Shown here one piece after another: positions 1 to 58,939 of a stretch of 64,000 bases of DNA. The stretch lies in the NCBI RefSeq assembly GCF_964204865.1, contig NC_135257.1, positions 3,472,001 to 3,536,000 of the forward strand, in the 5' to 3' direction. A model generated the notes under the pieces. It had not been told where the DNA came from and did no database searches. It was given only the letters and a program-made list of their open reading frames with translations. The position numbers and the translations under genes were made by a program. The stretch is from Styela clava. Lineage: Eukaryota. The stretch's first letter is position 1, and each line of letters starts with the position of its first letter.

Positions 1-2031
1 GTGAAAATGTTATCATCATATTTGGGTGTATTAACTGTATATATTTTTAATTATAAGACAGTCGTTTTTTTTATTAAAAATACGTATGAATTTCTCCTGT
101 TTTCTAAAAATTCTTGAGAAATTTTTGTATTTTTTCGACAGATCTAAAAAAAAGACAACATGGGTGTGATAATAACATTATTGAAAATGAAAAAAATTGA
201 TGGCGCTTAACAAAATCCCCCTCCTCCCTTTTCAAATTTGCTGAATGCAAGCATCATACGCTATTTTGGCATTTTCATAACTTTCAAACAGTGATTGTTT
301 TCGAAACTAATACTGCAATGTGGGCATTTCAATATATATTTATATATATATATATAAATATATTCAAATTGAAATCTCCTTGATATCATTTCAAACGTCA
401 TAACAACCTTTTACATGTTGATGCCATTGATTTATTTTTTATTTTTGTTACAGTACTCATAATTGACTATTTAATTAATCTTGACCGTTTATGTCAATGA
501 TAAATATAAATGTTCGGGTGTGCTAACTTACTTTTTATTCATCAAATTCACATTTTCAAATTATTTAAAAACACCATATTTTATGGAGATATCACTTTTC
601 ATGAGTGGCAATAAAATTTTGCATTTATTTGGTGAATTCAAAGTAGGTCGTTATAGAATGAGAAAATTCTGACGAGAATTCTGATGAAATGATTTTAAAA
701 AATATTTTTCACCTGTTCTGAATTATGATTTCCAAAAGATAGTACATTTAGTTAGACCCTATAAGCTGCCGTTTTCTGAAAGTATTTTCTTGCCGCGAAA
801 ATAAAATAATGTCTTTGGATAGCCATATGACTATTTTTTATAATCCTGCTGCCTATTTTTCATAACAATTCTGCTAAAATAGCCATAACAACAACAATGT
901 TGCAATACTCAATACATTTATTATTGGATCTTTCTATATATACTACATGGCTGCATACTACAATTCTATCATAAAATGCTTCATTTTTTAATGCTGAACG
1001 TTTTGCTGCTTTTGGTCGCTGCTTTTTTTAACTTGTACTGTACATGAAATTATTTTATTATTTGAAAATTTGACGTCAAGGCGCAAAAATGCTTTGCAAT
1101 GAATGTAAAATTGATTCGTATTTACAATTTTGCTAGCGATCAAGGCGTATTCTTCTATATAAAACAGACAGATTTGTTCGATTTTTTGGTGCACCAATAT
1201 ATTTATAAACTATATTGGACAAGTACTGCTAGTTATTTGCATTAAAATTGCCGAGATTTCTAGGTAATTTATTTTGGCATCAACGACTATGTCCAGTTAT
1301 AACGTTCAAGGAATTGTACTTTTCGTTGAAACCTTCATTCATTTAGGAATTACTTGTAATTTCATAACATTTTACTCATTATTTTAACAGTGCTTGCTCG
1401 AGATGAATATAACAATTTTGTTCCCTAACACATTTACGTACTACGTTATGGATGTCTAATTATTCCTTGTTATGTCAACTTTTATTTTAATTTTAACAAA
1501 CCCACGATTTTCATTTCTTTATTTGTTTATTTTTCATATTCATTGTGCTGCACGCTTTATTTTTGTTTATGTATTGAATCAATCGTGCTTATCGTTTTCC
1601 AATTTGCTATGAAAAATAACGGAAAATTACTAATATTCGTGCCTACTCGTGGAATCTGTGGGTGCGGTCTTCTGCTGAAGTAATTCTCATGAAAAATGTC
1701 TTTTTGATTCTTAAAATGGAGACTAAATTTTTAGGAATAATTGTTTTCAGTACGGTCTTCCACGATTTATGAATTTAAACGTCATTTCCTTTTTTTATTT
1801 CTCAATTGAGCCACGAGAACAAAATGCAATAAAACATCAACACGTACATTGTTGTCGATTTTAGTTGATGGGTCTTACAGCAACAATTTTATCGATTCAA
1901 AAATAGAATACAGAGTTTCAGACCTTGGAATTACATGATCACCAGCAACATAAACATTGGGTCGTTTCAACATATTCTAAAGAGAACATAACGTTTGATC
2001 TAAACGTCCCAGATTACTGGAATTCTGATAT

Positions 2032-2936: not shown

Positions 2937-4676
2937 ATGTCGAAGAAAATAAGTAAGTGGTCAGATGAATATGTACAACATGGATTTACGTATATCACAG
3001 AACCTGATGGGAATCAGCGTCCTCAGTGCACCATTTGCGACGCCAAGTTGAGCAATTCTAGCTTAGCACCGGCCAAACTGAAGGATCACTTTCTAAAGAT
3101 GCATGGCGTTGGAAAATACAAGAACACAACGCTCGCTGAATTTAAAATAAAAAGAGCCAGATATGATGAAAAGGCTACTCTGCCTGTTTTTGGCTTTGTT
3201 CCCATCGACAAACCGATCCTCACAGCATCGTACGAAGTTGCATACCTGATTGCCAAACAAGGCAAACCACACACCATTGGGGAAAAACTCGTAAAACCAG
3301 CTGCGTTGAAGATGGCGAATATCATGCTCGGAAAAGCAGCTGAAAATAAATTATCTCAAATTCCTCTTTCGAATGACACTATCAGCAAAAGAATTGATAA
3401 GATGAGCGATGACATTTTGGCTCAAATAATTTCAGACTTGATTTTGAGCCCGGCAAAATTTAGTCTCCAACTTGACGAGACCACCGACGTTGCCAGTCTA
3501 AGCCAGCTTGCTGTATTCGTGCGCTATGTGAAAGAAGACGTGATAAAGGAAGATTTTTTATTTTGTCAGCCTCTAACAACATCAACTAAGGCTATTGACG
3601 TTAAGAAACTTGTGGATAATTTCTTCAGAAACAACGATCTTTCGTGGGATATGGTTTGTGCAATTTGTTCGGACGGAGCCCCAGCCATGTTAGGGCGAAA
3701 ATCTGGTTTTGGTGCGCTAGTGAAAGCCGATGCACCACACATAACTTAACGCATTGTCTTCTGCACAGGTATGCGTTAGCAACAAAAACCTTCAAAACTC
3801 TCCAAAATTGGCAGAAGTATTAACAATTGTGGTGGAATGTGTGAACTATGTGCGAAATAGTGCTTTGAAGCACCGCATATCCAAGGACCTGTGCAATGAA
3901 ATGGGCTCTGAAATCGAGGTACTTCTGTACTATTCTAACGTTCGGTGGTTGTCCCGAGGAAAAGTGCTGAACCGTGTTTTCGCCTTGCGTGTGGGATTAG
4001 CCGTGTTTTTGCGAGAGCACCAACACTGTCATGCAGATTGTTTTGAAAATTCTGAGTTCATTCTCGTTTTGGCATACATGGCCGATATCTTCGGAGCTCT
4101 CAACCAACAGATGCAGGGTGGTGGAGTCAACATTATCGAAGCGGAAGAACATCTGAAGGCTTTTCAAAAAAAAATCGAACTATGGAAACGACGAACAGAG
4201 AATGATAACTTCGCTAATTTTCCTCTGTTGGATGACTGTATAAGTGAGATCGAAGATGTGTTCGGAAATGGGAACATTTCCGTACCCACAGAACTGAAAC
4301 AAGCAATTTCCTTGCACTTAGATGAGCTCACAAAGTCTCTCGACGGATACTTCCCGAACAGAGAGTCATATCCAGCATGGGTGAGACAGCCATTCACGTT
4401 TAGTGTTGATAAAGCAGATGTCAATGATAAATACCTTGATGAAATCATTGAACTTCAGCAGAGCCAGGATCAACAGCAACTCTTCAGAACAACAACGCTC
4501 TCAAAGTTTTGGTGTCACCAAATCGTAGCTTACCCTCTTCTTGCTAAGAAAGCCCTTGAGATACTTATACCGTTTGTTACAACGTATCTTTGCGAGAAGT
4601 CATTTTCTACGATGGTAGACATAAAAACTGAAAAAAGGAACAGACTTTGTTGCGAAAATGACATGAGAGTGGCACT
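2937..4676 (+). pseudogene. hAT Buster-family transposase (ZBED8/SCAND3/FAM200-like), frameshifted
   Basis: BED finger PQCTIC...DHFLKMH, catalytic LDETTD, SDGA and LCEKSF, and VRWLS. The CxxH motif (THCLLHRYAL) sits in a third frame at ~3749-3795, so there are two frameshifts. The C-terminus is cut off by the LTR insertion. Confidence 0.92.
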
Positions 4677-5529
4677 TGTGACATCGAGAATCGCATTCAC
4701 TTGATTTTTGTATTGACTTAAACATTGCGTCCGTTTAACTTGTGTAGTAATTTATTTGTTATTGTTGACGCCGTAATTTCACTTGATTGACAGTGTGCTT
4801 CTACACACTTTGTTACGAAACAATTGAGAGAGTCTTCGTGGCAATTGCTTGCCCAGACATGTCTCGCTTAGACATGGATAGTTTCGGTAATTTGCTTTAG
4901 ATAGCGCTTTACTTTTGCAGAGAATGGCGCTCGTTTCGTTGTAATTTGTAAATAAGTTAAACTTGTTCAGCGACCTTGGTTTTTTGTTTTGACTGTAGGA
5001 CGATTAAATAATGTAGATTATGGCTGCCCACCTAGGCCTAACTTAGGGATATTTTATGAGCATTAAATGGCTTTTTGTGATTGATTTTACAGTTATAGTT
5101 TATTTAATTGATTTGTTCGGATTTCATTGACGAATGATTTCATGTTCAACTTATGATAATTTAAGCCTGGAATAGCAGACAAATTCGGTATGTTATAATT
5201 TGTAACTCTTTCTGATTTAAAGGCTGCAAGTTATTCAATAGTAATTTGGTTCGACTTAATAATTAACTATGTTTGATAATTGTGTTCATAAATTTGAGTA
5301 GGCTTTCTAAAGGCCGAATTGTGTATAATTATTTATTTATTGCAAGTATTTTGTATTGATTTGTTTTTACGTTTGTATTAAGATAACCGTGTCAACTGTA
5401 TACCTCGAGTTGTGTGATTTTCTGGATTGAGGATACAAACTTGGGGCTTGAAAGACCGCGTTATTGAACTGTTAATAAATATCTAGTGTGCAGTCGGTGT
5501 CGTCCAGGTCACAAAGAACGGCTGTTACA
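4677..5529 (+). repeat. 5' LTR (853 bp)
   Basis: Direct repeat of 11857-12709. I counted 8 substitutions and no indels by eye (~99% identity). Confidence 0.97.
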
Positions 5530-5718
5530 TTAAAGTTATCGAATTTCCGCAAATAAAGTTATCAAATTTATGCAAATAAAGTCATCTGATTTGCATAACA
5601 AAAGTTTCGTCGAATGCCGGCAGGAGTTCGGTAAATCGTCAAAATTGAAGAAATCATCCTAGTGTTGAACATTTAAACTTTTGTGTTGCTTGTTTGATGA
5701 GCACTGTAATTGTACATT

Positions 5719-7134
5719 ATGGACGCAGAATCTGTTTCGAAATCAAATTTAGAAGAGTTACGTGCTCGTATGAAGGAATTATATCAAGATGCTGAGGGAC
5801 TTATGTCAGACTACAAAAATCGAGATTTGTTGAAATTGAAAAGTGCTGACATTGACAAACGGTTCACCGAGTATTCAAATGCTCATGAAATATATGTGAG
5901 TACTTTACGTTCTGAAGAAGATCGAAGAAATGTCAGTGAATTTTTCCAGTGTGAACTGCGCGAGTTTCAAGAATTTAATGTGCACTTACGTGATTGGTTC
6001 AAAAAGAGTGACGCTGATGGTCATAAATCATCGACACATAGCCCTGAAGCACGTTCTGTAATTTCTGGAAAAAGTTCCCGTCGTTCATGTGCCAGTTTAA
6101 GTTCGAGTACTAAACGTACAGAAGCTATTGCCATTAGAGAACTTGCTCATGCTAGTATTTGGCAGCAAGTAGAAAAAGATGCCGCAAAAAAGCGAGAACA
6201 TGATGCTAAAATGGCAGCGGATAAAATGAAATTAGATGCTCAACTTGAAGCTGAAAGACTAGAGCAAGAAGCGCAAAGACTTAAACATGAAGCCATGGAA
6301 AATGCTAGAAAGCAAGAGCAGGAAGCCCGAATGAAGGCTGAAAAGCTCAAACGTGACGCTGAAATAAGAGCTAGAGAAATCGAAGAGGATGCTCAAAGTG
6401 GAACGAAGCGTTTGGAATTGAAGCATGCATATGAATCAGCCTGTATAGCTGCCGATGTATGGGAAAATGCTTCGCAGGGAGGTGAAGGTATGTCATTATA
6501 TGAAAATATGTCTCGTTCACATTCACCTAATCAAATCCAAGAGTCGAATGAAATAGTGGTTCCAGTATTAAAGCCTCCTGATGTGAGACCTAAATTGCCA
6601 GCATTAGATTTGTTATCACAATCTCGAGTCAGAATGGAAAATCCTGTACTAAATGTTAGAAGACCTGCTTCTACTGATACTGTGCGAGATGCTGTGAATG
6701 TGAATATTCCTGATCAGTATGAATCAGTGAACCGACCGCCGTACACAGAACCACACATCCCACAACAAAGAAACACGCATGATCAATCGGCAATAAATGT
6801 GGAAAGTTTATTGGGCAATATGGCATCTATGTTGCAAGACGGAATTGATAGACCTCGACCTGAGTTATTGCATTTTAGTGGAATAGAGACTGAATATGTC
6901 CGGTTTATCACTACCTTCAACTTAAATATTGATAGAAGAGTACATGATACAAGTACAAAGTTGTCATATTTGGTACAATACTGTGAAGGTGATGCGAGGG
7001 AAGTGATTATGCACTGTACAATGTTGCCACCCGACGAAGGTTATAAAGAGGCATGCGATTTGCTCAGAAAGACATACGGTCGACCAATGCTTGTGGCTAG
7101 AAAATATTCAGAAAAGTTGACTAAAGGACCATGA
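5719..7134 (+). CDS. BEL/Pao gag N-terminal part (coiled coil plus DUF1759-like region)
   Basis: ATG 5719. Charged coiled-coil stretch, then FSG...KLSYLVQYCEGDA...GY.EA..LL...YG. Frameshift at ~7131 into the downstream ORF. Confidence 0.85.
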   Translation: MDAESVSKSNLEELRARMKELYQDAEGLMSDYKNRDLLKLKSADIDKRFTEYSNAHEIYVSTLRSEEDRRNVSEFFQCELREFQEFNVHLRDWFKKSDADGHKSSTHSPEARSVISGKSSRRSCASLSSSTKRTEAIAIRELAHASIWQQVEKDAAKKREHDAKMAADKMKLDAQLEAERLEQEAQRLKHEAMENARKQEQEARMKAEKLKRDAEIRAREIEEDAQSGTKRLELKHAYESACIAADVWENASQGGEGMSLYENMSRSHSPNQIQESNEIVVPVLKPPDVRPKLPALDLLSQSRVRMENPVLNVRRPASTDTVRDAVNVNIPDQYESVNRPPYTEPHIPQQRNTHDQSAINVESLLGNMASMLQDGIDRPRPELLHFSGIETEYVRFITTFNLNIDRRVHDTSTKLSYLVQYCEGDAREVIMHCTMLPPDEGYKEACDLLRKTYGRPMLVARKYSEKLTKGP

Positions 7135-10100
7135 TTGAAAGTTTGAAACCTGGAGATAATGAAGGTTTATTACGTCTTTCTCAAACATTAGAAGAATGTT
7201 TAGTCACTTTGACTCATTTGAAATATTTTGGGGATTTGGATAATTTTGATACTATTTTGTCCATCGTATTACGACTTCCTCTCAAGTTGCAGAACAACTG
7301 GAAAGAATCAGTGGCAGAATTAGATGGACAAGATAGAGAAGTGAGATTTAAAGATCTTGTTCGATTTATGAAGAAAAAGGCTGCGGCTGCAAATACGCCT
7401 TTTGGAAAAGCCTTGAGAGCTCGAAGGGAGCAAGAACAGCAATATCGTTTACGATTTCAATCATTGAATAGGCGAAAGATTCACGCTCATTCAACTGCTG
7501 TGAATTCAGCTGTTGACAGCAGTGTTACCAGTGCAAAACATATTGAAAAGGGAAGAGATGTCTGTCCTGACTGTTTAAAGACGTCACACAAACTTGTTGA
7601 CTGTTACAAATTCCTGCAGAAGTCACACGGTGACCGCTTGAAGATTGTTAGAAAGGCAAGATTGTGCGATAATTGTTTTGTATATGGTCATATGTCGAGA
7701 AATTGTCGTAAACCACCTGCTTGTACTGTTGACGGGTGTAGGTTGAAACATAATACTTTATTGCATAGAAGAGAACAAGAGACATGTACCCAGACAGAAA
7801 ATGCTGCTGGTATAAATGAGTCAAAAGTTGAAGCATATGCGACTTCAAAAAGCTCAGCAGGATGTTTTTTGAATATTGTACCTGTCAAGATCTGTGCCAA
7901 CAGAAGAGAGATAGAAACGTATGCATTTCTAGATGAACGCTCTACTGCTTGCTTATGCGATGAGCGACTTCTTGATCTATTGAAGTTGAGAGGCAAGAAA
8001 ACGCAGTTTTCGTTGACAACTGTGAATGCGGTACCAACATCACAAGATGGTTATGCGGTTGATTTTACTGTAAAATCACTTGATGGTAGAGAAAGTGTTG
8101 ATTTATCTCATGTGCTAACTGTTGATAGACTGCCTGTTAAAGCTAATGAAGCACAATTTGATGTACAAAGTTATGCACATTTGAAGGGATTGAAGATTCC
8201 TACTCTGCCGTGTAAAGACGTGATGTTGATGATTGGGGTAAATGTCCCTAAAGTGTTTTGGACAATGGATGAGAAACGAGGGAAACACAATGAACCTTCG
8301 GCGAAGAAATCCATTTTAGGATGGTCATTGGTTGGACCAGCTTTATCTCAGGAGAGAAACAGTGATGTTCACATTCATTGCGTTCAAGTGCAAGAGGAAG
8401 ACTTGCTGAGTCAGCAAATCAAATGTTTGTGGGAAAGTGATTTTAAAGACGCTTCACTGTCGCCTATTCCATCAATGTCTAAGGAAGACAAATACGCATT
8501 GCAATTGATGGAAGATTCAGTTGAGATCGTGGACGGACATTATCAGTTACCATTGCCATGGAAGCCAGGATGTCCTGATTTGCCAGACAATCGAAGTGTT
8601 GCGATGAAACGCTTAAAGTACATTGAACGAAAATTGAAGAGTGATCCTGTTTTGAAAAAGAAGTACTGTGATACTATGGAGAAATATATTAGTCTTGGAT
8701 TTGCAAAGCGTATCTCGAATGAATATAAAGTTGGCCGTAAAGGTGCAGTTTCGTACTTGCCTCATCACCCTGTGTTTTCTGAACAAAAGCCAGGCAAGGT
8801 ACGCGTTGTCTTTGACGCTGCATCACGTTGCATGAATACTTCCTTGAATGACCAACTATTGAGAGGCCCGGATTCGGCAAATTCTCTACTTGGAACTCTT
8901 CTCCGCTTTAGACAACCAGAAATAGCTATTGTGGCTGACATTGAAGCAATGTTCCATCAGGTGAAAGTACACCCGAAGGATTGGAATGTATTGCGATTTA
9001 TGTGGTGGCCTGGAGGTGATTTGTCACAGGATCCATCAGAATATTTTATGGTCAGGCACATATTTGGTAGCGTCTCATCTCCATTTTGTGCTAATTGGAG
9101 TCTGAAGAAGACAGCTCAAGATCATCAAGATGAATTTGACGAAAATGTTGTTAAAGGAGTTGAGCGAAATTTTTATGTTGATGATTACCTGAATGGCTCA
9201 TCTACTGTAGACCAGGGAATTCATATTGTTCGAGAAACGAATAAATTGCTGGAGAAAAAAGGATTTCATCTAGCAAAGTGGAAAAGTTCCAATCCTGAAG
9301 TTCTGTCAGAGATTCCTGCTAAAGACAGAGCAGACACTGCGTCAAGTGTAAACTTAATACCTGAAAAGATCGATCGAGTACTCGGAATAAAGTGGAATAT
9401 CCAAGAAGATTGTTTTGGATTTGATGTTAATGTGAAATCAAAACCCGCAACAAAACGAGGGATTTTGTCTGTACTCAGTTCGATATTTGACCCGATGGGA
9501 ATAGTGGCACCTGTAATACTAAAGGCAAGGATATTGATGCAGCAGTTATGTCGAAATAATTATGAATGGGACGATGAAATATCGAATAGTGAAAATATAT
9601 TGTGGAACAGATGGCTCGAAGATATTCCCGGACTTGAGAATATATTCATGCAAAGATGTTTTGTGCCGTCTGGTTTTGGCAATATTGTGACTCGTCAAAT
9701 ACACCATTTTGCAGATGGCTCAGCAGTTGCCTATGGAACTGTATCGTATTTGCGACTAATCAATGAAGATGGGAAGATTCATGTTGCGTTTCTCTTAGGA
9801 AAAGTTCGACTTGCACCCATCAAAACTGTTTCAATACCACGGCTGGAGTTGACTGCTGCCGCTCTTGCAGTCAAATTAGATTTATTCCTGAGACGTGAAT
9901 TAGACTTCGAAGAAATAGAGTCGATGTTTTGGACAGACTCAACTTCCGTGCTTTTGAGTATTAATAATACATCACGAAGATTTCCAACATTTGTGGCAAA
10001 TCGACTTGCAAAGATTGAAGAGGGATCGAATGCTTTGCAGTGGAGATATGTACCTACAGATTTTAATCCGGCAGACGATGCATCCAGAGGGTTGTCGGTA

Positions 10101-11771
10101 CTATCGTTGATGGATGAACGATGGCTGAAGGGACCATCATTTCTCCAAGAGCAAGAGGAACATTGGCCTAAACCGCCAGTACAGTTACCTGAGCTTCCTG
10201 ATGAATTTGTAAGATGCAAGCCACGAGTTGTTGCGAATTATGTTTCTGAGTTTGATTTGAAGCCAATGGATAAATTTATTTCATATTTCTCAACATGGTA
10301 TAAATTGAAAAAGGCAAGTGCATGGATGATTCGATTTAAAGAATACCTTCATAAGAAGAAGAAATATAAGTGCAATGAGTAACTTGAAGTTGAAGAATTG
10401 CGAGTTGCTGGAGACGACATTTTGAAATACATACAGAGACAAGAATTTGGCGAAGTTATTGATGCATTGCAGAAAGCCAATCATAGAAGTACATCTGGGA
10501 AACAAGTACTGAAGAGATTGAAGATTGCAAATTTCCTGCATAAACTCAATCCGATTATGAAAGATGGCTTCATCAGAGTTGGTGGGAGATTGAGAAATGC
10601 ACCGGTTGATTTCGATGTTAAACATCCGATTATACTTCCACAAAAACATCATGTAACTGAGATGATTATAAGAGAACATCATGTATCTACACATCATTCT
10701 GGTATGGGGAGTACATGGACTTCTCTGAGACAACGATTTTGGATCGTTAAAGGAGGCGCTATGGTGAAATCTGTTATCAGAAAATGCATGTTTTGTCGAA
10801 GAAGAAGTTCACCTGTGAGTAAACAGATTATGGCAGATCTTCCGAAAGAAAGAGTCACACCAGGTGAAAGACCATTTACCTATGTTGGAGTGGATTACTT
10901 CGGACATTTTCTTGTAAAGCAAGGACGAAGTACTGTCAAGAGGTGGGGCTGTATATTTACATGCATGACAACTCGTGCCGTACACTTGGAAGTTGCATAC
11001 TCGATGGATGCAGATTCATTCATAAATGCGTTAAGAAGATCTATTGCACGTAGAAGTAGACCATTCAAGTTCATCTGTGACAACGGTAGTAACTTCGTTG
11101 CAACAAATAAAATCCTACGTAAAGAAATAGAAGTTTGGAATTCAAGCAAAGTTGGACAATTTTTGCGTCAGGAGAATATTAAATTTCATTTCAATCCACC
11201 TACTGCTTCTAATTTTGGAGGATGTTACGAAAGATTAATTCGGTCAGTTCGAAAGATTTTGGTTGCTCTCTTACACGATCAGTTGGTGTCAGATGAAGCT
11301 TTGGCTACTATTTTTTGTGAAGTGGAATCACAGTTGAATTCCAGACCCATCACTCCAATAAGTTTCGATCCGAAAGATGATGAGCCACTCACTCCAAATC
11401 ACTTGCTGTTACTGAATCCTACAAGTAATTTACCTCCTGGCATATTCGACAAAAAGGACTGTTACACTCGACGAAGAGGGCGACAAATTCAGTATTTAGC
11501 TGATCAGTTTTGGATCAGATGGACCAAAGAATACTTACCCACACTTCAGACACGACAGAAATGGACCTCTAAAGAACGTAATATGGAAGTTGGTGATATT
11601 GTGCTACTTGTAGACAATACTATATCCAGGGGGAAGTGGCAGACTGGACGTGTTATGGAAACTACACCTGATAAACTTGGAGCTGTGCGTCAAGTTACTG
11701 TGAAGACATCCAGGGGTTTATTGAGAAGGCCAATTGCAAAGTTGTGCTTGATTCATAGAGTTAATGAGTAA
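7131..11771 (+). pseudogene. BEL/Pao gag-pol remainder (Zn knuckles, protease, RT, RNase H, integrase) with one in-frame stop
   Basis: Three Cys/His knuckles (CPDC..H...C, CDNC...H...C, CTVDGC..H...LH), protease AFLDERS, RT FYVDD, RNase H FADGS/RLEL/WTDS/NPADDASRG, integrase HHCC plus GVDYFG/CDNGSN/GGCYER. TAA at 10380-10382 is in frame with the 10398 ORF. Confidence 0.93.
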
Positions 11772-31600: not shown

Positions 31601-34600
31601 AATTAAAAGAGTTTCATAGCCCTCAATTAATTGAACTAAAAAGTTGAACGCTCACCACTATCTAAATTCAGTAATGTTTAGAATTTCACAGCTGCACACA
31701 AAGTAATTTGGAAATTGTTATATTGTTTCAACACAGATATGAAAATGACCGAGTAGTTGCCCAGCAAGGGCGCCCTCCAGATAGATTTTATTTTTTGATC
31801 ACCGGAAAGCTGCTGATTGTGAAGGAATATCAAATAGACACAGGAATAATTTCCAAAACAGTCGGAGTTCTAACGAAAGGAATGACAACAAATGTTAGTA
31901 ACAAAAAGAAAAAGTTTTATAGAATTAGAAAGAGTGAACCTAAAAGTATGAATTATCACATTAGTTTGTGTGTGCATATCAAAATCCGACCCGATGTGGT
32001 GTCTGCAAATAACTAGCAGTGGAAGATAGAAAAGGCATTTAAATAAGCCTGGCGCATCCAATATAAGCAAATATATGTCGTAATAATATTTTTTCACCGT
32101 TCCAACGGTGTTGTGTATAATTCTTTTGCTCGTGTCATTTCGAAGTTGGAAAGTATACACAGTCATTACTGTGTATAAGCGAAGCTCTCGCCCTTTTCAG
32201 GTAGAGGAAATGGAAAAACGAAATTTACGAAAATCCTCTCTGATTTGCCGAGGACCTGTTGAAACTCTCGTTCTTGATTGCGATGTAAGTAACTTAATAA
32301 CCGTTTTCAATTCTAAACTAGCAAACTCAGATGCCAAGCACATACAACAAACTTGGGTGGAATGTAATCTGCGACGGTATACAAACATTTCAACCTATGC
32401 GAAACCTTTCGGCCTAGAGATATATCGCCATCGGGTATCGGCAATATTGGTCATTTTTTCGATGTCAGTTTGTTTCGGTTCCGGCTAAAATAAACTGATA
32501 TTTACGATTTATTCAGCTCTTTGATCTGATCCAGAACATCACGATTCCCAGCGCCTGTGCACAACTTACAACTATTTTATCCAATCTGTCCCAGACATCC
32601 GAGATGATATACGTGTCGGCCCAGATAAGATCGAGTGCGCGGATAGGTCTATCAAGGATGCGAGATGCAATAGGAGACGAGGCTCGATTTTGTATCGAAA
32701 TAATATTACATGATATGGCATTAAAAAGTGCCGTGTTTTTAGGGGACATGCGTACAGCTAGGTTTTATTCCAATTGCTTTCCATACACATGTTAATAACC
32801 TAAGTTCGTGTTCAATTGTTTGCGTTTAAACTCTCAAAGTTTGCCTCCAATTGTAATAACAAAATACTTTGACAATCAATAAATAATAGAGAAGAAAAAT
32901 GACTTTTTTTCACTAACGAAATATTCAATCAGGGTGATCGAGTCTTGTCTTCTATCGCGCTGCACGTTGTTTATAAACGTATCTCCGCACACGAGTCTGT
33001 ATAGCCAAAACTTCCGCCGAAACGTCTGTAAGTCATCTTCGATCACGTATTGTAGGCTACTCTTTTTGTTAAAACACATCCCTGAATTCAAAATCTGCAA
33101 ATATAACTTGTAACTAAGGTGTTTGATACCAACGGGGTGGGGTGTTCATAAAGTCTTGAAATGTTTTAAATTTATACGCGAATTTATAAATTTATTTAAA
33201 ATTTTGGATCCGAGATTCATTCAACACAAATCGCATATAACTGTAAATGTAAATGTCGTAGTAGTCAGAAGCATCCTCAAACCAAAAACTCCTTTTGTCT
33301 AAATATTCAAGGGCGAATGAGCTCATTATAAATCGATTCATTCAATATAGCGCTATTCAATTCAATATTAGATTCGATCTTCATATTTGCAATATACCTT
33401 CTCCAATAGGATATTCTGAATCCGTCGAAGAATCGTATATATTACGCCTAGTAATCGTCCGAGATGAGACCAAATCGTCAGTTACTTTATATGAAATATA
33501 ATTACCCATCTACTGTTATATGAGCAAATATTGTTTCTTTAAAGAATTATTTTCTAATACACGGAGAAAGAGGTGGAGCACCTAGGGAGTTCCTGTCAAG
33601 ACATTCACTATTTCGAACGTTTCCATTTGAGACAGTTAAATGTCATAAACAGTTATTGAAGTTGCAATATTTTCCGTAAGTCTTACATTAGTTAGTAAAT
33701 ATGTTTTATAGGACGGATTCAAGTTTATTTTACTTATGTTCAACAAACGTTTACATAAAGTTTAAAAATATAGAGTATATATAAAAAAGTTATGTGCAAA
33801 TTCTTTTTGTGAACTTTCAAGTATCTTTGTTTATTGCTTTTCAGCAAAGGTGCTATTATTTTTGGCGGTGGTTCGGAATTTGAATGGATTTATATTATAA
33901 AATCAGTAAGTTCTTTTTTTTAGTCTTATTGTTAATACACCATTAAGTCTTATTGTTAATACACCATTATATATACACTACAGACCGCATATGACAACAT
34001 GATATGTTCTAAGCACTGATAAAAATTCATAGCGCCACATACATATTCAGGTGTCATTATTTGGCTGCACATGCATATCTCAACCCGCACTCCACTTAGC
34101 CACACCGTTGTCAAACTTTATTTCCTAATAGTGCTTTTGTTTTGTTTTTAAGATATTATAACATCTAAATATTCAGGGGGAATGTTCATTGATACGAGTG
34201 CAAACTGTAGCCGACTTCAAGAAAAAATATCCTGCTTCCTCCATAAACAATTCGGAATTTGGAAATAGACGCCGTAGATCGAAGTCAGCAGCTGAAAAGC
34301 TTGCTGATTTCCGAGCTTGGAAAGGTCCCATAAGGTCACCACTGAGCTTTCGACAGACTCGTCCTCACAACAATGAAGAACAAGGTAGACAGATGGAATT
34401 GCACAAAGCAAGGTTGGTGTGCAGTGTCTGGAAAATATTTTGTAAAAGAAAGCACTGGGTACTGTCCCGTTGTTGCTTTACTTTTAATTAGATCTGTTTT
34501 CTTTGAGCTACTCGCCTACATTCCGATTCATTCGTAAAACCGAAAGCCTTGTGTAACACGATATATATACTATAATTTATTGGGTTACTTTTAATGATAA

Positions 34601-37759: not shown

Positions 37760-40417
37760 TCAGTACATATAGTCTTTCTGGTTTAAATTCTGGAATATAC
37801 ATTGAGAAAATATGAGAAATAAAGATGTAAATCGTAAATGGTCATGTCGGATATATGTGTATTGGAAGCAGAAAAAATTTATGACTCTTATAACAATTTA
37901 TTTCTCTCCATGCGGAAGATAGATTCATCCTAATCTACATTAATTCAAGTTTGAGTTTTGGGTTTGATATGTTTGGATGGCATTTATTTGATAATCTTGC
38001 TTGGATTTGTGAAAATTGGATATTATATTCGATCGGATATTATTTCTATTGTCTAAAATAATTTTGCACAACACTATTGTAGATTTAGCGCAAAAGTCAG
38101 CGTACCAATTATCTTAGCATGGCGAATTAACAATTTTGAACAAAGAATATTTCGAAAATGGCTCATATCGGTTATTTTTTTAAGTGCATATTTGTTCCGG
38201 ACCCCCTTTTGGCATTTGAGTTAGATTTATGCAATATGAAATAATTTTAATTCATTATCATTGCAGAGAACATAGTCACGTATGACAAAAGATATAATCT
38301 ATTCAATTTATAGTTTTCTTCAACTTTTACGTTTACAGGGTTCCAGAGTTCAATGGATTTGGGATTCGAGAGACAGGTTCGTGCATAGTTTCTAATTAGG
38401 TTCTGATTCGCGTTTAAAAAGTGAGTGCACTCACAGATTAATTGTAGCAGGCTCACCTTCATTGGACGCTTAAATATGAATGGAATTCGGGAAAATGTTC
38501 CTCCAATTACTTCTTGGTCCTTAGGATGATCTTTCTGCGTTTCTGCTTTCTGTTGAATAAAAATCGTTATATGTTTGGCATATTTCTGTGCTAATAGGTT
38601 CTCGTTTAGATCAAAATTTGAAATTTTAAAGCTCGCATAATTTGTAACAAAATAATAGTGTCAGAAATTGTTGTCAAATAGACAGGGACTTTCTACTAAA
38701 TTAAAGCTTTAATACTTGATCGTGCCACTATACCTGAAAGTAGTTTCTTCTGATTATGAACGGACTGACGTAAAGACTTGTGCTTTCTCTCTTTCTTGGC
38801 ACATCCTGTTGCAATACGTTTGCATGAAAACAAAGTGTGAAATAATCAATTTAGCAAAAAGTAAGAAATGGCAAAATACTTTTGTGCTGTATATGTGCTG
38901 GAGCTGGGAGATAAAATTCCGATTAAGTATTAACATTTTTTCTTTGACTTGCTTTATGGCCTTAGGGAATACAATATTGGGAGTATAACTCGGGAAGTGA
39001 ACCGTTTCAATCAATTGAACGTTTTCATGAGCTACGTTTTTGGACCGAGCTCAACAAAAGCAGTCGTTGTGAAGGAGAGGGGCGTTCAGAATACTGAGAT
39101 TCTTATTTTTGAACAAAACCTTTTTTTTGCACTTTGCGACTGTGTATGCAATGTAAGGCTGGTACACTAACAAACAAGTGGTCGCGCATCGAAGGAACGA
39201 CACAATTTCAATGAATGCAAATAACACAGGGGGCACACAAATCATTATCATGGTGCGTATATACAGAATCTAACAGAAATAATTCACCATGATAGATTTT
39301 CTTTCCATTTTCATAGGATTTTTTATTCGTCGAATATCATCTTTCACTTCTTGAAACCCCAAATCGTTACCGTTGTCCAGGTTTGTTGATTCGTATTGCT
39401 CAATCAGTTGCTATCGTGTCAATGTAACAAAAATAAAATTCGTTACATAATATTAACTTTTGAATGATAATAGTTACTAGTTAGGTATTTTTCAGATTGC
39501 AATCATGAAGGCACCTGTGATAATATTCCCTCATTTTTAATTGCTTTGTATTCAAATATATACTTCATGGGAATATACTTTAATCAACTATTAATGTTGA
39601 GGCCTAAGCTTTAACTATAACTTATAATATAAATAACACCAAACTCACCATCTCTAACATATCGGAGACTACGTCAACGTTGGGCTCTCGATCGAACACT
39701 AAAATAAACATTCAACATAAATAAAAAGCATGTTATCAAATACAAAAATACAAAGTCGTGTACTAATAAATAGTGTGGCCCTAATTGAGTTCTATATATT
39801 TGTTTTCGAATACAAAATGTACTTAAAGCTTCAGAAAGAAAGCTGTAATCTATGGAAGCTATAAGATATTAAGTTGGTATTGTAGACGCCAAATTCATAT
39901 CCACGCACAGCAGTCAAGGGAACTCTTGAATCAAATAGAATAGTTATCTTTATTTCTGCTACAGCATCTTTTTATTATACGCATACGTATCCACGCGCGA
40001 ATAGGCATAGGGCAAGGGAAGGTAGTTTGTCTCGCCCTACCCCTGGTATTCACGTATTTAACTATGTTGTTATCGCAGGTTAAAACCCTTGGATCCAATC
40101 TCTATGATCACCAGTTGTCCTACGGTTAGTAGTCTGTGTTGAATCGAAAACTATGTTCTTTCAAAAATAGGAGCTTGTAAAGTATCAGATGTACAAAGGA
40201 CCTCATAAAACACACAAATGCTTTGTCAAGCTAGAAATTTAAACATTACAAAGTAATGTTGAATATATATCGGGATAGTAATTCGATAACATAAATTAAA
40301 ATGTGCAGTCTACTTACCAATAGTTGCACCATGGGTTGATACGATGAAAAAATTCTGCATCAAAATTATACCGTACACTAACCATATATTAGAACTTCTC
40401 GGCGTTGTTAGAAGCAT
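37760..40417 (-). CDS. Secreted peptide precursor (~131 aa), neurotensin/neuromedin-N-like candidate
   Basis: Exons 40417-40318, 39698-39649, 39410-39288, 38549-38457 and 37789-37760 splice in frame. Donors are strong (gtaagt, gtgagt, gtgaat, gtgagc). It has a signal-like N-terminus, an acidic spacer, RR/RK/KR sites and SRIPFIF-KR. The last exon is the least certain. Confidence 0.7.
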
Positions 40418-42545
40418 AACTTTCTTTCCTTGAATATCACAAATTATCAAATATATACTGTGCAATAAGATTAGATATTAGTATTGTAAAGATAATGAAG
40501 TTGATAAAAATGTTCATCAATTAAAGTATGTCGTAGCTGTAGTTATGGGGAACGCACCACAGAAGACAAAAACAAAGCGATATACATGTATCAAAATCTC
40601 ACTGCGACCTCGCAGCGGGGCACTGGTGAAGTTTCTCTCATGCCGGACCGTTTTATAGAAAACGTTTCCCCGCGAACTTTCCTCTTGATGTCGCCGCTTT
40701 CAATGCACATGGCAACAAATTTGTACGCACATAAATTACTTGAATATTAAAATGCACCACTCGACTCGATTTTCTGTCTCAGTGACTTCCTAACTGTCAT
40801 ATCCAAGATGGTTTTAAGATAATGGCTTATTAGTAGACCTTATTTTGAAATTTTATTTAAAATCATGGCACAGAACAAAGTTGCAGCTGAACCTGACTTT
40901 CGAGACTAATTTTATGACAATAAATAATTATAGTGACCAGTCTTGAAATCAATAATATAGGTTTCATTAATATTCGTTTTGTGTATTGAAATTTGCTTGA
41001 CGTTTGATCGAAAATGTGGCATGAAACATACATTTATGTTTTCAATCAATTTATTATATTTAATTAGATTGGGTCCTTAATATTTTTTTGAATATTTACT
41101 TGCCTCATCAATATCCTGTAGACGTCATGGACCTCATTGATAGAACAGACATTAATTAGCCTGCACATATACGGTATGTATTTTTTAATGCATTTTCACG
41201 TAATGTGACATCGAACAAGGCTTTGAACACAGATACTTTAAAAGAACTCGAACCTTTTACATTGCCCAATTCATTTATTACACTATGGGTAAAGTGAAGG
41301 GCATGAACATGCGCATTTATTAGTATATATTTCCATAGTCAATCTAGAGCTTAAAATCGGAATCTTGTCTAGAAACTGAACCGGCCCGCAGCACAAAATT
41401 CTCGATTTGAGGTACTGAAGTGAGCAAAAACAACACATTCAATTCTAAGATTATTAAGAATCTTGTCAGCAAGTGGGACGTGTTCAACTGAATTCCTAAT
41501 TTACAATTGTGCTTTGAATATTTACCTGATAGATAAACCCAAACCTGGAACCGACCTGAAAAGTCAGCCCACATGTACAACTCCATAACTATAATTTGAT
41601 TATTTGAGACTTTACCTAAGAAGTCTATTGTGTGACTTTTGAGACACGGAATATGCAATATTAAAAAAATTCGTGTTGTTCTTGTTCAGGCATGGTTATA
41701 GTACCAGCAACCTTCTTGAGTTTGTGTGTTGTGATATCATTTAATAATATGTATTATGAAATATATGAATTATGAACAGTCTTTTGTTATTCTTTCTTAC
41801 CTTATCATTACCCTAAACTACTCGTCCTCTTTTCTCACTAAGTCACCCATTCAAATCTGTCATTTGGTTTGTGAGCTGCCCAGTTTTATACATCGTGCAT
41901 AGTTAGAAATAAGTACAGTAGATTGAAACAAAGTTATTAAATAAGAATGGCCTGTTCATGCTGATCTTAGTGCTGAACTATGAGGTTATTACGATTTAAT
42001 CTATTATTGAAAACGGAACGACTTCCGAAGTCATAGAATCTATGTGGAGATCCAAATGAGGCTGAAACATCAAGAACCTTTTTGAAATCGGTTAAAAAAC
42101 TTTTTCATGACTTGTTTATAGGCAGCTAGGCAGCCTTGCCCAGTACGACCAACATCTTTGCATCCGCTGAGGTAGAAAGCTTATAATACTGATCGCCATG
42201 TGTACATGCGTACATTGAAGAAGCGATCGTAATAACTTCAAAATTTGGAGGTCAGTTTGACTTTACTCACAAAAATTGCATGACAGAACCTGCTCGTAAA
42301 ATGCTCTCTGATATGGTATTTAACATTTTTAAGTTTAACTGCCCTTTTTCTGTTTACTTTTAAAACTTCAAGAAATGGACTTCAGTCAACGGGCGGTTGC
42401 AATATCGCTGCATCTAATCAATATCTTTAATTAAAACAAATATTGCAACCATTTATTCTCTTAATCGGCCCATCATATGTCTCATAATGACAGTATTACA
42501 GGAAACGTATTTTCTTGAATATTTATTTAAACTGCAATCATGATA

Positions 42546-47863: not shown

Positions 47864-48766
47864 TTATTTGGCTTTCGCTGCTAATTTATTAGCAACACTG
47901 TAGTGGGTAGCATTGACAGTCAATACACCAAACGTTGAGCCATGTCGAAACTTGTAGCTTGGAACGTAGCCTAGGTATTTCGGTACCATTCCTTCGTGCC
48001 TGTGATATATGACGCCATCTTTGCGAGTTAGCCGACGATCTTGTGCAAAAGAATTCGGGCGTTCCCGAGATGACTCTTTGGTTTGTGGTCTATCATTGGG
48101 CCAGGCATACCAGTAACTTGCACCGTATAATGTTTGGGGATAACCCTCAGGATGCTTTGATGCAATTATGACAGGTTGCTTAATTGGAGGAACGGATATA
48201 TCGGAAAGTCTTGAAGACGATTTTGGAGTTTCTCGATCCAGCTTTACTTCTTGCTTCGCTTTAGACCTCGTTGCAGAGTATGCCGTTCTTGGGCGTAATG
48301 ATTCTTTTTTTAGCATATCTGAACTTCCCGATGCTAGCATTGATATATGTGATGGATGTGGACTAGGTTGCCTGTTATCTTGTGGTCGACCTTCTCTAGA
48401 TATCGCTGCTGGAGCTGACCTTACTCGATTCGAGGACGTAGGAGATTTAGGTGTTTTAGGATGTTCTGATTTATTCGAACCCTGTTGGCTTAGTGTATCT
48501 TCATCTTCAGGGCGGTAAAACCGGCTAGATTTTGATTTGTACCCTGTAGCTGTTGTGGGCTTCATTGGGCTACTTACACATCGCACTAGAGACCTGACTA
48601 CTTGAAGTTCGTGGAGACTGTTTCTGTAGTAAGGCACATGTCCACCATACCCATTTATCGGGTCTGGATTTGGCGTCGACTTGATAGGTTCGTCACCATA
48701 TTTCTTTATATATTTCTCATGCTGTTCTCTCAAAAATTTCGTGTAATCAAAATTCAGTCCCGGCAT
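47864..48766 (-). CDS. Intronless 300-aa FAM166/CIMIP2-like (PYG-repeat) ciliary microtubule inner protein
   Basis: Motifs INGYGGHVP and GMVPKYLGYVPSYKFRHGSTFGVLT, separated by an S/P/R-rich linker. Confidence 0.7.
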   Translation of the reverse strand: MPGLNFDYTKFLREQHEKYIKKYGDEPIKSTPNPDPINGYGGHVPYYRNSLHELQVVRSLVRCVSSPMKPTTATGYKSKSSRFYRPEDEDTLSQQGSNKSEHPKTPKSPTSSNRVRSAPAAISREGRPQDNRQPSPHPSHISMLASGSSDMLKKESLRPRTAYSATRSKAKQEVKLDRETPKSSSRLSDISVPPIKQPVIIASKHPEGYPQTLYGASYWYAWPNDRPQTKESSRERPNSFAQDRRLTRKDGVIYHRHEGMVPKYLGYVPSYKFRHGSTFGVLTVNATHYSVANKLAAKAK

Positions 48767-56421: not shown

Positions 56422-57976
56422 TTTACTATTTTCAGGTTGTGCGCCATCTTGGTGCACATACTTCTGGAGGTCCCTTTTTACCTAACCCTAACCCTAAAGC
56501 CAACCATATCCACATGGAAAATGTTCTAAATTATGGTACCCAAAATGTGTCACCAGCAGGGGCAGACCTGCCATTACAGCATTACTGGCTACACTGTTAA
56601 AAAATTTTTTCCAAATTTACTAAAAAAAAATGGCAGCAAAAGTACTGGCCCCATGTAAAAAAATTTACAGGCCTTATCAGTAGTATTATGAACAGTATTT
56701 TTAGTAAATTTACATAGATTGATGGTAGCAAAAATTACTATAAAACTGTAAAAAATACTACTTTTTTGACGGCAGTAAACCTACCCACCAGTAGTAATAT
56801 TTTTTACCTTAAAATAGTAAATAAAATTACTATCTCGATGGCAGCTACCTTACCCGACAGTAGTACCATACAATACTAGCATGATGGTAATTTCTCACTC
56901 GCGATGACCGAACCACTACGAGAGTAGCAAAGCTATTTACTAGCACGACACAACAGTAAACACACATATTACAGTTAAAATAAAAAAAACGAGATTCTGG
57001 AAACGAAAATCATTTTATTACAATTGATATTTTTATAAAACCATAAATACACACTGAACGCCTTTAAGGCTTCTAAAACAGTTTCGAAAGAAATTTCAGA
57101 AAATATATGGTCTACAGTCAAATTTAAACACCTATTAGGAGACGTTGAAGGCTATCCATGCAATAAAATGAGGGCACAAGTTCTTGTAGGACATAGGAAT
57201 TCTGTATGTAATGGATCAAAATCGAGTTTCTATTGGCACTTGTTAGAAATCTGGTCTATACATTTCGAGGTCTATTTATTTATCTCAATAGATCCAAATA
57301 AAGTCAAACAAGAAAACGTTTTAGGACTGGGTTGTTTAGTTGACAAACTTATTTTGAAATCAAATTTCTGGATACCAGGCTATGAGACGCTGGCAAACGT
57401 GACATAATAACGAGACTATTGTAAGAATTTCACGATTTTTTGCACTTTACTCTAATTATAATGTTTCAAAATGAAAATTTTGGGAAATATCATGCAACCT
57501 ATTTTGTAGCTATGGCAAGAGTTTCAAAGATGACAAATTCTAAAGTTAATTATGCAAGATAATTTTCAAGATAAGATTTCAAGGGGCGTGAAGTGGAAGA
57601 GCGGGAGTTTGAGGATTTTGGTAGGAGCATGAGTGGGAGTTCTAAATACATACGTTGGTTTGTGTTTTTAATTTGCTGCCGTGGTAATCCAACTCAAAAC
57701 AAGGTGCCCCGAACTCATTGCAAAAATTTTTTCTGCTTCACACTGTTTCCCTCTGTTTTGCGCTCTTTCGCGCTGTTTCCCCACTATTTTGCGCTGTTTC
57801 CCTCTGTTTTGCGCTGTTTCGCGCTATTTTGCGCTGTTTCGCGCTCTTTTGCGCTGTTTCGCGCTCTTTTGCGCTGTTTCGCGCTATTTTGCGCTGTTTC
57901 GCGCTCTTTTGCGCTGTTTCGCGCTCTTTGCGGTGTTTCGCGCTGTATTCAGTGAGTAGTAAGACCGTTTATAAAC
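56030..57976. mobile_element. Foldback-like element with modular 10-bp subterminal arrays
   Basis: Inverted ends gtttataaacg(g)gtcttactact(t/c)actgaatacagcgcgaaacaccgcaaagagcgc, followed by (cagcgcraaa)n arrays at ~56061-56203 and ~57742-57946. Confidence 0.85.
56347..56469. mobile_element. Short MITE (related TIR) enclosing a (CA)n microsatellite at 56392-56420
   Basis: ctccagaagtatgtgcagcaatatgtcgcacaacctgaa versus ttcaggttgtgcgccatcttggtgcacatacttctggag. Confidence 0.75.
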
Positions 57977-58939
57977 CGCTGGACGTATGTTTTCACGTCA
58001 TGAATTTCGTGCAAGGCCCGCATGTCGAAACGCTTATTCGACTTTTCAGACCGCAGAAACTATTAGACAAATGTAACCGTTTTTGTGTTCCAGATATGGA
58101 ATAATCGTCAATTCTACCACGCATTCGTGAAGTAGTGCAATTTACTAAATTTAATGAAGTTTTTATTAGATTTCATTGCATCATAGTTCGGACAACCACG
58201 CGTTTTGCCAGATTACTGCCGTGATTACAGATTGCAAGGGAGGGTAAAATAGAACATGTTTTATCAAATCGAATAATTCGAATATTTTTAACGAATTGTC
58301 AAATATCGGGTATTTTTATTATATATACAACAGGCATGTAGAACGCTAGACATTCTAATGTTGGTGAGCTATTTCTGCCTTTCCTCTTTTTTCACAAGGA
58401 CCAATTATTACACAACGGCGAACGTCAAAGTTTGGCTGTATATTCCTGGGAGAACTATGCGTTCATATCGGCGACATATGTTAAAGACAGCTAATAGGGA
58501 GTGAATTCGGGGTTTTATTCCGATTTTTATCTTTTGCGTCGGCTATGATCCTTCTCCCTACCGTTTTTAAATTACCTGTCCATATCTTAAGCTAAAAATA
58601 TTACCATTTCTGACGCCGGAATGCGGATATCTATGAATACGATAGTTGACCTTCTTTTTATTTTTCTACTGTGCCTGTTTTATTTTCGTATTGAATGGTG
58701 AATGAAAACCCGGCAAATGCCTTGGTAAAATTTCACACAATAATTTGTTACCTTGTTTGACATTTTCAATTTACGAAACGCGCGGTGTTGGCGCCCTTTA
58801 TGCAAAACTTGGAATTGAAACAATACCCAGATACGACTCCTCAAATTTGTCGTTTCTGTTCGGTAGCAAGAGCCGTGGGGTAATTCTCTGGAATTTAAGG
58901 GATTGGAATCACTTGAAATAAATTTAAAAATGAAATTAC

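What the first reader, a model, noticed from the sequence alone, without database searches (positions are those of the whole stretch)
37760..40417. Hidden 5-exon prepropeptide with a neurotensin/neuromedin-N-like motif
Seen: five short minus-strand exons, none assembled by the ORF track, splice in frame to MLLTTPRSSNIWLVYGIILMQNFFIVSTHGA-TIVFDREPNVDVVSDMLEMQLIEQYESTNLDNGNDLGFQEVKDDIRRIKNPMKMERKSIMKAETQKDHPKDQEVIGGTFSRIPFIF-KR-PMKNLNQKDYMY*. Established: neuromedin N is KIPYIL and neurotensin ends RRPYIL. Both are non-amidated, followed by KR and near the precursor C-terminus, and the human precursor ends KR-DSYYY. Ciona NT-like peptides end Pro-X-hydrophobic-hydrophobic. Inference: RIPFIF-KR, the Tyr-rich tail (DYMY) and a possible pyroGlu start (QEVIGGTFSRIPFIF) suggest an invertebrate-chordate neurotensin-family precursor close to the vertebrate motif. 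The first three intron phases (1,0,0) match my recollection of vertebrate NTS, which needs checking.
Basis: partly seen in the sequence, partly recalled or inferred. Interest (0 to 1): 0.85.

Follow-up and report, generated by a model that had tools for sequence, protein, structure and literature searches.

The report
Sea-squirt two-peptide neurotensin-like precursor gene

Summary

The six-exon splice translates exactly to RefSeq XP_039272576.2, [quoted passage not shown], 155 aa. Isoform X2 skips only spacer exon 3.

The missed exon strengthens the peptide reading. It encodes RKR-ESTSLYVSPFII-RR, a second copy of the motif in RIPFIF-KR.

The protein has these hallmarks of a peptide precursor:
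- a hydrophobic N-terminus
- no cysteine
- an acidic spacer
- two non-amidated Pro-Phe-Ile-Ile/Phe peptides followed by dibasic sites

In a second allele, 11 of 13 substitutions lie before the peptide region.

Membership of the neurotensin family is not shown:
- There is no Pfam Pro-NT_NN match and no exact PYIL motif.
- The two peptides lie on separate exons, whereas vertebrate NTS has four exons with both peptides on one. Its intron phases, 1,0,0, do match the first three here.
- Urochordates seemingly lack NTSR genes, and the PYIL motif has arisen convergently several times.
- No orthologue or paralogue was found.

The closest known kind is the Ciona NTLPs, which end Pro-X-Ile/Val-hydrophobic.

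Interest is moderate.

The parts
40318..40417 (-). Exon 1, CDS part (ATG at 40417-40415). It encodes residues 1-33 plus one base: the hydrophobic N-terminus and putative signal peptide MLLTTPRSSNIWLVYGIILMQNFFIVSTHG|A. Donor gtaagt, phase 1.
   Evidence: hydropathy; AF2 helix at residues 7-29
40451..40457 (-). TATA-like element TATATAT, 40 nt upstream of the ATG. An in-frame stop lies between it and the ATG.
   Evidence: sequence only; function inferred
39649..39698 (-). Exon 2 (50 nt), start of the acidic spacer. Acceptor ttttag, donor gtgagt, phase 0 at its 3' end.
39288..39410 (-). Exon 3 (123 nt, 41 aa, phase 0/0), acidic spacer with RR77-78 and RK87-88. It is skipped in RefSeq isoform X2.
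38734..38805 (-). Acceptor caacag, donor gtatag.
   Evidence: (ORF 38728..38814)
38752..38787 (-). Predicted peptide 1, ESTSLYVSPFII (residues 98-109). It is preceded by RKR, followed by RR, has no Gly for amidation, and its N-terminal Glu could cyclise.
   Evidence: processing is inferred
38457..38549 (-). Exon 5 (93 nt, 31 aa, phase 0/0): KAETQKDHPKDQEVIGGTFSRIPFIFKRPMK. Donor gtgagc.
38472..38489 (-). C-terminal hexapeptide RIPFIF of predicted peptide 2. From dibasic sites alone peptide 2 spans residues 112-141. It is followed by KR142-143.
   Evidence: processing is inferred
37760..37789 (-). Exon 6, CDS part: NLNQKDYMY plus TGA. Acceptor ttccag. No AATAAA or ATTAAA within 860 nt downstream.

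Best explanation
This is a real, single-copy, six-exon gene of Styela clava: RefSeq LOC120346808, annotated only as 'uncharacterized protein'. It encodes a 155-aa secretory prepropeptide. After removal of a signal peptide of about 30 residues, prohormone-convertase-type cleavage at RKR95-97, RR110-111 and KR142-143, followed by carboxypeptidase trimming, would release two non-amidated peptides with a common C-terminus. Peptide 1 is (p)ESTSLYVSPFII. Peptide 2 is a longer peptide ending ...GGTFSRIPFIF. An acidic spacer and a 12-residue tail would also be released. The peptides most likely act as tunicate neuro/endocrine signals of the Ciona 'neurotensin-like peptide' (NTLP) type, through a receptor that need not be an NTSR. 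Shown here: exons, frame, identity to the RefSeq model, the two isoforms, the repeated motif with its dibasic flanks, and the allelic pattern. Inferred: secretion, cleavage, bioactivity and tissue of expression.
For: The window's six exons translate exactly to XP_039272576.2. A second RefSeq isoform, X2 (P0004), drops only spacer exon 3 and keeps both peptide exons. No protein relative exists in the searched databases, so the RefSeq models presumably rest on Styela transcript data; this is my inference from how NCBI's pipeline works. The N-terminus has one Arg, then a 16-residue hydrophobic core of mean Kyte-Doolittle hydropathy about 2 (my hand sum from the residues), then small residues T-H-G|A. 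There is no Cys, and the spacer has net charge -6. The motif P-F-I-[IF] followed by a dibasic pair occurs twice. About 0.001 occurrences are expected within the ORF from the protein's own composition, and the only two hits in the 64 kb six-frame translation are these. Each peptide lies near the 3' end of its own phase-0/0 exon. The other allele, XP_039272576.1 (P0003), differs at 13 residues. Eleven are in residues 1-94 and two in residues 95-155. None falls in LYVSPFII-RR, GGTFSRIPFIF-KR or the tail (Fisher p 0.05-0.08). The nearest clusters by language-model features for the whole protein are almost all peptide-hormone precursors: DH31-type, 26RFa, UTS2B, NPFF, NMU, CCK and PBAN, scores 0.88-0.91, a lead only. 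AF2 finds no confident fold, and residues 84-155 are unstructured. Ciona NTLPs are non-amidated peptides of 8-12 residues ending P-[SG]-[IV]-[ILV], found by mass spectrometry in the neural complex. Two of them carry L-Y before the Pro, as peptide 1 does.
Against: No RNA reads or peptidomic data could be examined, so expression, tissue and junction usage rest on the RefSeq models alone. No SignalP-type predictor was available. His29 at -3 makes cleavage after Ala31 atypical, although T-H-G|A fits. No orthologue was found in any other species, so conservation of the motif between species is untested. The last site is KR followed by Pro. From my recollection, not verified here, Pro at P1' is under-represented at dibasic sites that are actually used. 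Peptide 2 would be 30 residues unless additional monobasic cuts occur. The allelic contrast is only marginally significant. The atlas evidence is weak: its recognition value is 1724, below the 2300 that the tool says 91 in 100 proteins of known families reach, and the C-terminal part alone gave noise.
Confidence: 0.6

Rival explanations
1. The gene is a true orthologue of the vertebrate neurotensin/neuromedin N gene, by common descent in the ancestor of tunicates and vertebrates. The Styela peptides would keep the aromatic residue after Pro that Ciona NTLPs have lost.
For: RIPFIF-KR parallels neuromedin N (KIPYIL-KR; sequence from my own knowledge) position by position: basic, Ile, Pro, aromatic, Ile, hydrophobic. 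There are two tandem non-amidated peptides near the C-terminus, bounded by dibasic sites and followed by a short Tyr-containing tail. Precursor size is similar: 155 aa here, and the Pfam Pro-NT_NN model has 162 positions. The first three intron phases, 1,0,0, equal those of chordate NTS. Peptide 1 starts with Glu after RKR and contains Leu-Tyr, loosely like pQLY.. of neurotensin (that sequence is my knowledge).
Against: No PF07421 match was found for the protein or in the genome. The genome-scan control rang in no genome, so that scan is uninformative by itself. No vertebrate or Ciona protein was retrieved by any search. The motif is PFII/PFIF, not PYIL. Peptide 1 lacks the basic residues before Pro. 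The peptides lie on separate exons of a six-exon gene, whereas NTS has four exons with both peptides on one. A phase-1 intron after a signal peptide followed by phase-0 introns is common in secreted-peptide genes (my knowledge). Urochordates seemingly lack NTSR genes. The Ci-NTLP-2 receptor is unrelated to known peptide GPCRs, and the authors who discovered the Ciona NTLPs now call them Ciona-specific. The motif has evolved convergently at least three times.
Confidence: 0.15
2. The gene encodes a lineage-specific small secreted or orphan protein that is not processed into signalling peptides. It could be a tunic, mucus or immune-related product, or a young gene of little function. On this view the repeated motif and dibasic sites are incidental.
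For: The gene has no homologue outside Styela clava and no paralogue. Earlier notes of this scan report many lineage-specific secreted peptide genes in this genome (unchecked). Expression tissue is unknown. KR-Pro may be a poor convertase site (my recollection).
Against: The motif plus dibasic pair occurs twice, with about 0.001 expected. The peptides are not cationic (net -1 and 0), unlike styelin- or clavanin-type antimicrobials. There is no Cys and no predicted fold. Allelic changes avoid the peptide cores. Both isoforms retain the peptide exons.
Confidence: 0.2
3. The gene model is spurious: a non-coding or mis-spliced transcript whose open frame is accidental.
For: I could not see any reads. 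The exons are short and AT-rich, and the exon-4 donor (gtatag) is weak. No canonical poly(A) signal lies within 860 nt of the stop.
Against: A 155-codon open frame across five junctions has a chance of about 4e-5, and the other frames hold 7-14 stops. Two allelic versions both keep the frame open over 155 residues. RefSeq reports two isoforms. GC content is higher in the CDS (0.376) than in the introns (0.327).
Confidence: 0.05

Closest known systems
Ciona neurotensin-like peptides (CiNTLP-1..6; genes cint-A KY.Chr2.889 and cint-B KY.Chr2.888)
   Same: Both are from tunicates. Both give short non-amidated peptides released at basic sites, several per precursor, with a C-terminus of Pro-X-(Ile/Val)-(Ile/Leu/Val). 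The Ciona peptides are pQLHVPSIL, MMLGPGIL, NKLLYPSVI and SRHPKLYFPGIV. NTLP-5 and NTLP-6 have Leu-Tyr shortly before the Pro, as does ESTSLYVSPFII. One Ciona peptide starts with pyroGlu.
   Different: The residue after Pro is Phe here and Ser or Gly in Ciona. Peptide 2 ends in Phe. Ciona has two adjacent genes; here there is a single gene with no tandem copy in the window.
Vertebrate neurotensin/neuromedin N precursor (NTS; Pfam PF07421 Pro-NT_NN)
   Same: Both are secreted precursors of similar size, with two tandem non-amidated peptides near the C-terminus flanked by dibasic sites. Both peptide ends are Pro-aromatic-Ile-hydrophobic. RIPFIF parallels KIPYIL. The first three intron phases are 1,0,0 in both.
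   Different: There is no HMM match. Phe replaces Tyr, and Ile or Phe replaces Leu. There is no Arg-Arg before Pro. This gene has six exons with the peptides on separate exons, against four exons with both peptides on one. Tunicates seemingly lack NTSR.
Convergent neurotensin mimics (contulakin-G, octotensins, ancylotensins)
   Same: They show that a short Pro-aromatic-Ile-Leu C-terminus with dibasic flanks, sometimes one peptide per exon, arises repeatedly without common ancestry.
   Different: Those are venom or parasite products with an exact PYIL motif aimed at a vertebrate NTSR1. The Styela gene is endogenous, single-copy and lacks exact PYIL.

Membership tests
Vertebrate neurotensin/neuromedin N precursor (Pfam PF07421 Pro-NT_NN) | Match to the family profile at or above the curated cut-off (25.3 bits) | tested here: not met
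   hmmscan of P0001, P0003 and P0004 against Pfam at E<=10 gave no PF07421 hit. The six-frame scan of the whole genome with PF07421 gave no match, but its control genomes did not ring either.
Vertebrate neurotensin/neuromedin N precursor (Pfam PF07421 Pro-NT_NN) | Conserved C-terminal Pro-Tyr-Ile-Leu motif of both peptides | tested here: not met
   The peptides end Pro-Phe-Ile-Ile and Pro-Phe-Ile-Phe. The substitutions are conservative, but the motif is not PYIL.
Vertebrate neurotensin/neuromedin N precursor (Pfam PF07421 Pro-NT_NN) | Two tandem non-amidated peptides near the C-terminus, bounded by dibasic sites | tested here: met
   The arrangement is RKR95-97 / peptide 1 / RR110-111 / peptide 2 / KR142-143 / 12-residue tail, with no Gly before the basic pairs.
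Vertebrate neurotensin/neuromedin N precursor (Pfam PF07421 Pro-NT_NN) | Four exons, intron phases 1,0,0, both peptides on the last exon | tested here: not met
   This gene has six exons with phases 1,0,0,0,0, and the peptides lie on exons 4 and 5. Only the first three phases agree.
Vertebrate neurotensin/neuromedin N precursor (Pfam PF07421 Pro-NT_NN) | Cognate NTSR1/2-type receptor in the same genome | not testable with these tools
   No NTSR sequence was available by reference. The literature states that urochordates seemingly encode no NTSR genes (bioRxiv 10.64898/2026.02.02.703354).
Ciona NTLP-type tunicate peptides | Short non-amidated peptides ending Pro-X-(Ile/Val)-(Ile/Leu/Val), released at basic sites, more than one per precursor | tested here: met
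   Peptide 1 (12 aa..SPFII) fits fully. Peptide 2 (..IPFIF) fits except for its terminal Phe. The comparison is with Table S1 of PMC12441681.
Ciona NTLP-type tunicate peptides | Precursor homology or synteny with cint-A/cint-B | tested here: inconclusive
   Word-indexed searches with P0001, whole and residues 92-155, returned only the Styela isoforms. The exhaustive HMMER search used exon 3 only. No Ciona genome or precursor sequence was reachable.
Ciona NTLP-type tunicate peptides | Mature peptides detected in the neural complex by mass spectrometry | not testable with these tools
   No Styela peptidome was found in the literature searches.
Generic neuropeptide/peptide-hormone precursor | N-terminal signal peptide | tested here: inconclusive
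   The n-region has Arg7, the hydrophobic core is residues 11-26, and T-H-G|A fits the -3/-1 rule. AF2 predicts a helix at residues 7-29. No dedicated predictor was available.
Generic neuropeptide/peptide-hormone precursor | Spliced transcript exists | tested here: inconclusive
   Two RefSeq isoforms match the window exactly.

The most novel reading that the evidence does not exclude
The Styela PFI(I/F) peptides, the Ciona NTLPs and vertebrate neurotensin/neuromedin N all descend from one two-peptide gene of the tunicate-vertebrate ancestor. Styela would keep the Pro-aromatic-Ile-hydrophobic end that Ciona lost. The neurotensin ligand would then predate the NTSR receptors, or would have switched receptors in one of the lineages.
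Probability: 0.15. Interest if true: 0.7.

Novelty: new member of a known kind. Interest (0 to 1): 0.45.

Why it matters
Neurotensin is treated as a chordate-restricted or vertebrate-restricted hormone. The only invertebrate-chordate candidates, the Ciona NTLPs, are so divergent that their discoverers now call them Ciona-specific, and the one deorphanised receptor is unrelated to NTSR.

A second tunicate precursor whose two peptides end Pro-Phe-Ile-Ile/Phe is one conservative step from Pro-Tyr-Ile-Leu. It offers a concrete, synthesisable pair of ligands. With them one can test whether tunicate NT-like peptides form a family, which receptor they use, and whether the resemblance to neurotensin reflects ancestry or one more case of convergence.

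It also gives a function-level hypothesis for a RefSeq gene that currently has no name.

Tried and rejected
**Reads and contigs**

**Relatives**
- Exons 3, 4 and 5, sent by reference, matched only themselves in the own genome.
- The exhaustive HMMER search with exon 3 found only the RefSeq protein and a chance LRR hit. In hindsight exon 3 is the least constrained part.
- Word-indexed searches with P0001, whole and residues 92-155, found only the two Styela isoforms.

**Family and feature tests**
- Pfam gave only sub-threshold noise: OpcA and DUF3100.
- The PF07421 genome scan was empty, and its controls were also silent.
- An atlas search on residues 92-155 gave noise.
- Exons 4 and 5 show no significant similarity beyond the motif, so an exon-duplication origin is not shown.

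**Literature**
- Searches found no paper naming this gene and no Styela neuropeptidome.
- They did not verify the DSYYY tail of human NTS or the P1'-Pro rule (searches failed on syntax).
- A window-wide AWTAAA scan was uninformative; a local scan replaced it.

**Rejected readings**
- An antimicrobial-peptide reading is rejected, because the peptides are not cationic.

**Handling of the joined model**
- No typed or joined spliced model was sent to any search tool.
- Whole-length searches used the database record P0001, which the exon-3 search returned.
- The exons were joined only inside a local script, to compare them with P0001.
Full report
**Observation**

Each has GT..AG borders and gives the stated translation.

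|---|---|---|---|
| 1 | 40417-40318 | gtaagt | 1 |
| 2 | 39698-39649 | gtgagt | 0 |
| 3 | 39410-39288 | gtgaat | 0 |
| 4 | 38549-38457 | gtgagc | 0 |
| 5 | 37789-37760 | ends in TGA | - |

Exons 3 and 5 of the final model, and later exon 4, match only themselves in the genome. The window is G000:C9:3472001-3536000.

**Match to a database record**

An exhaustive HMMER search with exon 3 returned one strong hit (3.8e-18), P0001, a 155-aa protein that holds exon 3 at residues 51-91. P0001 is RefSeq XP_039272576.2, 'uncharacterized protein LOC120346808 isoform X1 [Styela clava]'.

A local script placed this extra exon at 38805-38734 (acceptor caacag, donor gtatag). It also showed that the six-exon splice of the window translates to P0001 without a single difference. 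Intron phases are 1,0,0,0,0.

No typed or joined model was sent to any search tool. All whole-length searches used the database record P0001.

A second RefSeq isoform, X2 (P0004, 114 aa), omits exon 3 and keeps everything else.

**Is it more than chance?**

- At the stop-codon frequency of the gene's own introns, 155 open codons have a probability of about 4e-5. The other two frames of the spliced CDS hold 14 and 7 stops.
- Two alleles, XP_039272576.2 and XP_039272576.1 (P0003), both keep the frame.
- No protein relative exists in the searched databases, so I infer that the two RefSeq isoforms rest on Styela transcript data. This is an inference about NCBI's pipeline, not a result.

**What it encodes**

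The N-terminus has one Arg, then a 16-residue hydrophobic core (residues 11-26), then T-H-G|A.

The rest has no cysteine. It consists of:
- a spacer of net charge -6 (residues 31-94)
- RKR95-97
- ESTSLYVSPFII
- RR110-111
- NYFQKAETQKDHPKDQEVIGGTFSRIPFIF
- KR142-143
- PMKNLNQKDYMY

Further points:
- The strict motif P-[FYW]-[IVL]-[ILVFM]-[KR][KR] occurs only twice in the six-frame translation of the 64 kb window. Both occurrences are in this CDS, with 0.375 expected per window.
- From the protein's own composition, about 0.001 occurrences are expected per 150 positions. The motif was defined after the fact, so these numbers are generous.
- Each peptide lies near the 3' end of its own phase-0/0 exon. 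Exons 4 and 5 share nothing significant beyond the motif.
- The two alleles differ at 13 residues: 11 in residues 1-94 and 2 in residues 95-155. None falls in LYVSPFII-RR, GGTFSRIPFIF-KR or the tail (Fisher p 0.05-0.08, suggestive only).
- A single-sequence AF2 model is of low confidence. It shows a helix over the hydrophobic N-terminus and no structure in residues 84-155.
- Language-model neighbours of the whole protein are nearly all peptide-hormone precursors at scores 0.88-0.91, a lead only. The C-terminal part alone gave noise.
- A TATA-like element lies 40 nt upstream of the ATG. No canonical poly(A) signal follows within 860 nt.

**Most likely mechanism**

The product is a secreted prepropeptide cut at the three dibasic or tribasic sites to give two non-amidated PFI(I/F)-ending peptides.

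Peptide 1 begins with Glu directly after RKR and could cyclise.

A caveat from my own recollection, which I could not verify: Pro after KR is an unfavourable P1' residue for convertases.

**Comparison with known families**

*Ciona NTLPs.* These are pQLHVPSIL, MMLGPGIL, NKLLYPSVI and SRHPKLYFPGIV, from two adjacent genes. The Styela peptides share the non-amidated Pro-X-Ile/Val-hydrophobic end and, for peptide 1, the Leu-Tyr before the Pro. They carry Phe where Ciona has Ser or Gly.

*Vertebrate NTS.* It has four exons with intron phases 1,0,0 and both peptides on one exon, and a conserved PYIL motif. The Styela gene shares the first three phases, the tandem C-terminal layout and a hexapeptide (RIPFIF) that parallels KIPYIL conservatively.

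Several points count against membership:
- There is no Pro-NT_NN profile match.
- The motif is not PYIL.
- The peptides lie on separate exons of a six-exon gene.
- No relative outside Styela was retrieved.

The literature adds that urochordates seemingly lack NTSR genes. The Ci-NTLP-2 receptor is unrelated to known peptide GPCRs, and the NTLPs are regarded as Ciona-specific. NT-like C-termini arose convergently in cone snails, octopods and hookworms.

I therefore file the gene as working like a tunicate NT-like peptide precursor. I do not file it as a member of the vertebrate neurotensin family.

**Novelty and verdict**

No paper names this gene or a Styela NT-like peptide. It is a new, plausible member of a known kind: tunicate neurotensin-like peptide precursors.

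| Reading | Probability |
|---|---|
| Genuine processed peptide precursor | about 0.6 |
| Shares ancestry with neurotensin | about 0.15 |

Interest is moderate (0.45). Expression, processing and cross-species conservation remain unshown.

Noticed in passing
window 5710-11771 (+): Three long consecutive ORFs of a BEL/Pao-type LTR retrotransposon: a DUF1759 gag-like ORF; Pao peptidase A17 plus reverse transcriptase; and integrase zinc-binding, rve and DUF5641 domains. The ORFs appear largely intact.
   Followed up: partly
window 2937-4704 (+): Two adjacent ORFs with DUF4371 and the hAT C-terminal dimerisation domain. This is a hAT-family transposase, apparently split by one stop or frameshift.
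   Followed up: partly
window 47864-48766 (-): A single-exon 300-aa ORF with a CMI2B-like (ciliary microtubule inner protein 2B) match just over the Pfam cut-off. It is the upstream neighbour of the peptide gene on the same strand.
   Followed up: partly
window 31708-32016 (+): An ORF fragment with a sub-threshold cyclic-nucleotide-binding domain match, probably one exon of a larger spliced gene downstream of the peptide gene.
   Followed up: no
window 38247-38663 (-): The frame of exon 5 stays open for 137 codons, running through the gtgagc donor for 70 further codons. An unspliced read-through would replace the NLNQKDYMY tail by a different C-terminus. No annotated isoform uses it.
   Followed up: partly
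window 57593-58104 (+): Overlapping ORFs in three frames made of a short tandem repeat (CFALFCAVSRSFALFRA-like units). It looks like a minisatellite rather than a gene.
   Followed up: no
PMC12441681 Table S1 versus PMC6475428: The peptide MMLGPGIL is labelled CiNTLP-3 in the 2025 atlas paper but Ci-NTLP-2 in the 2019 receptor paper. This is a naming inconsistency in the literature.
   Followed up: no
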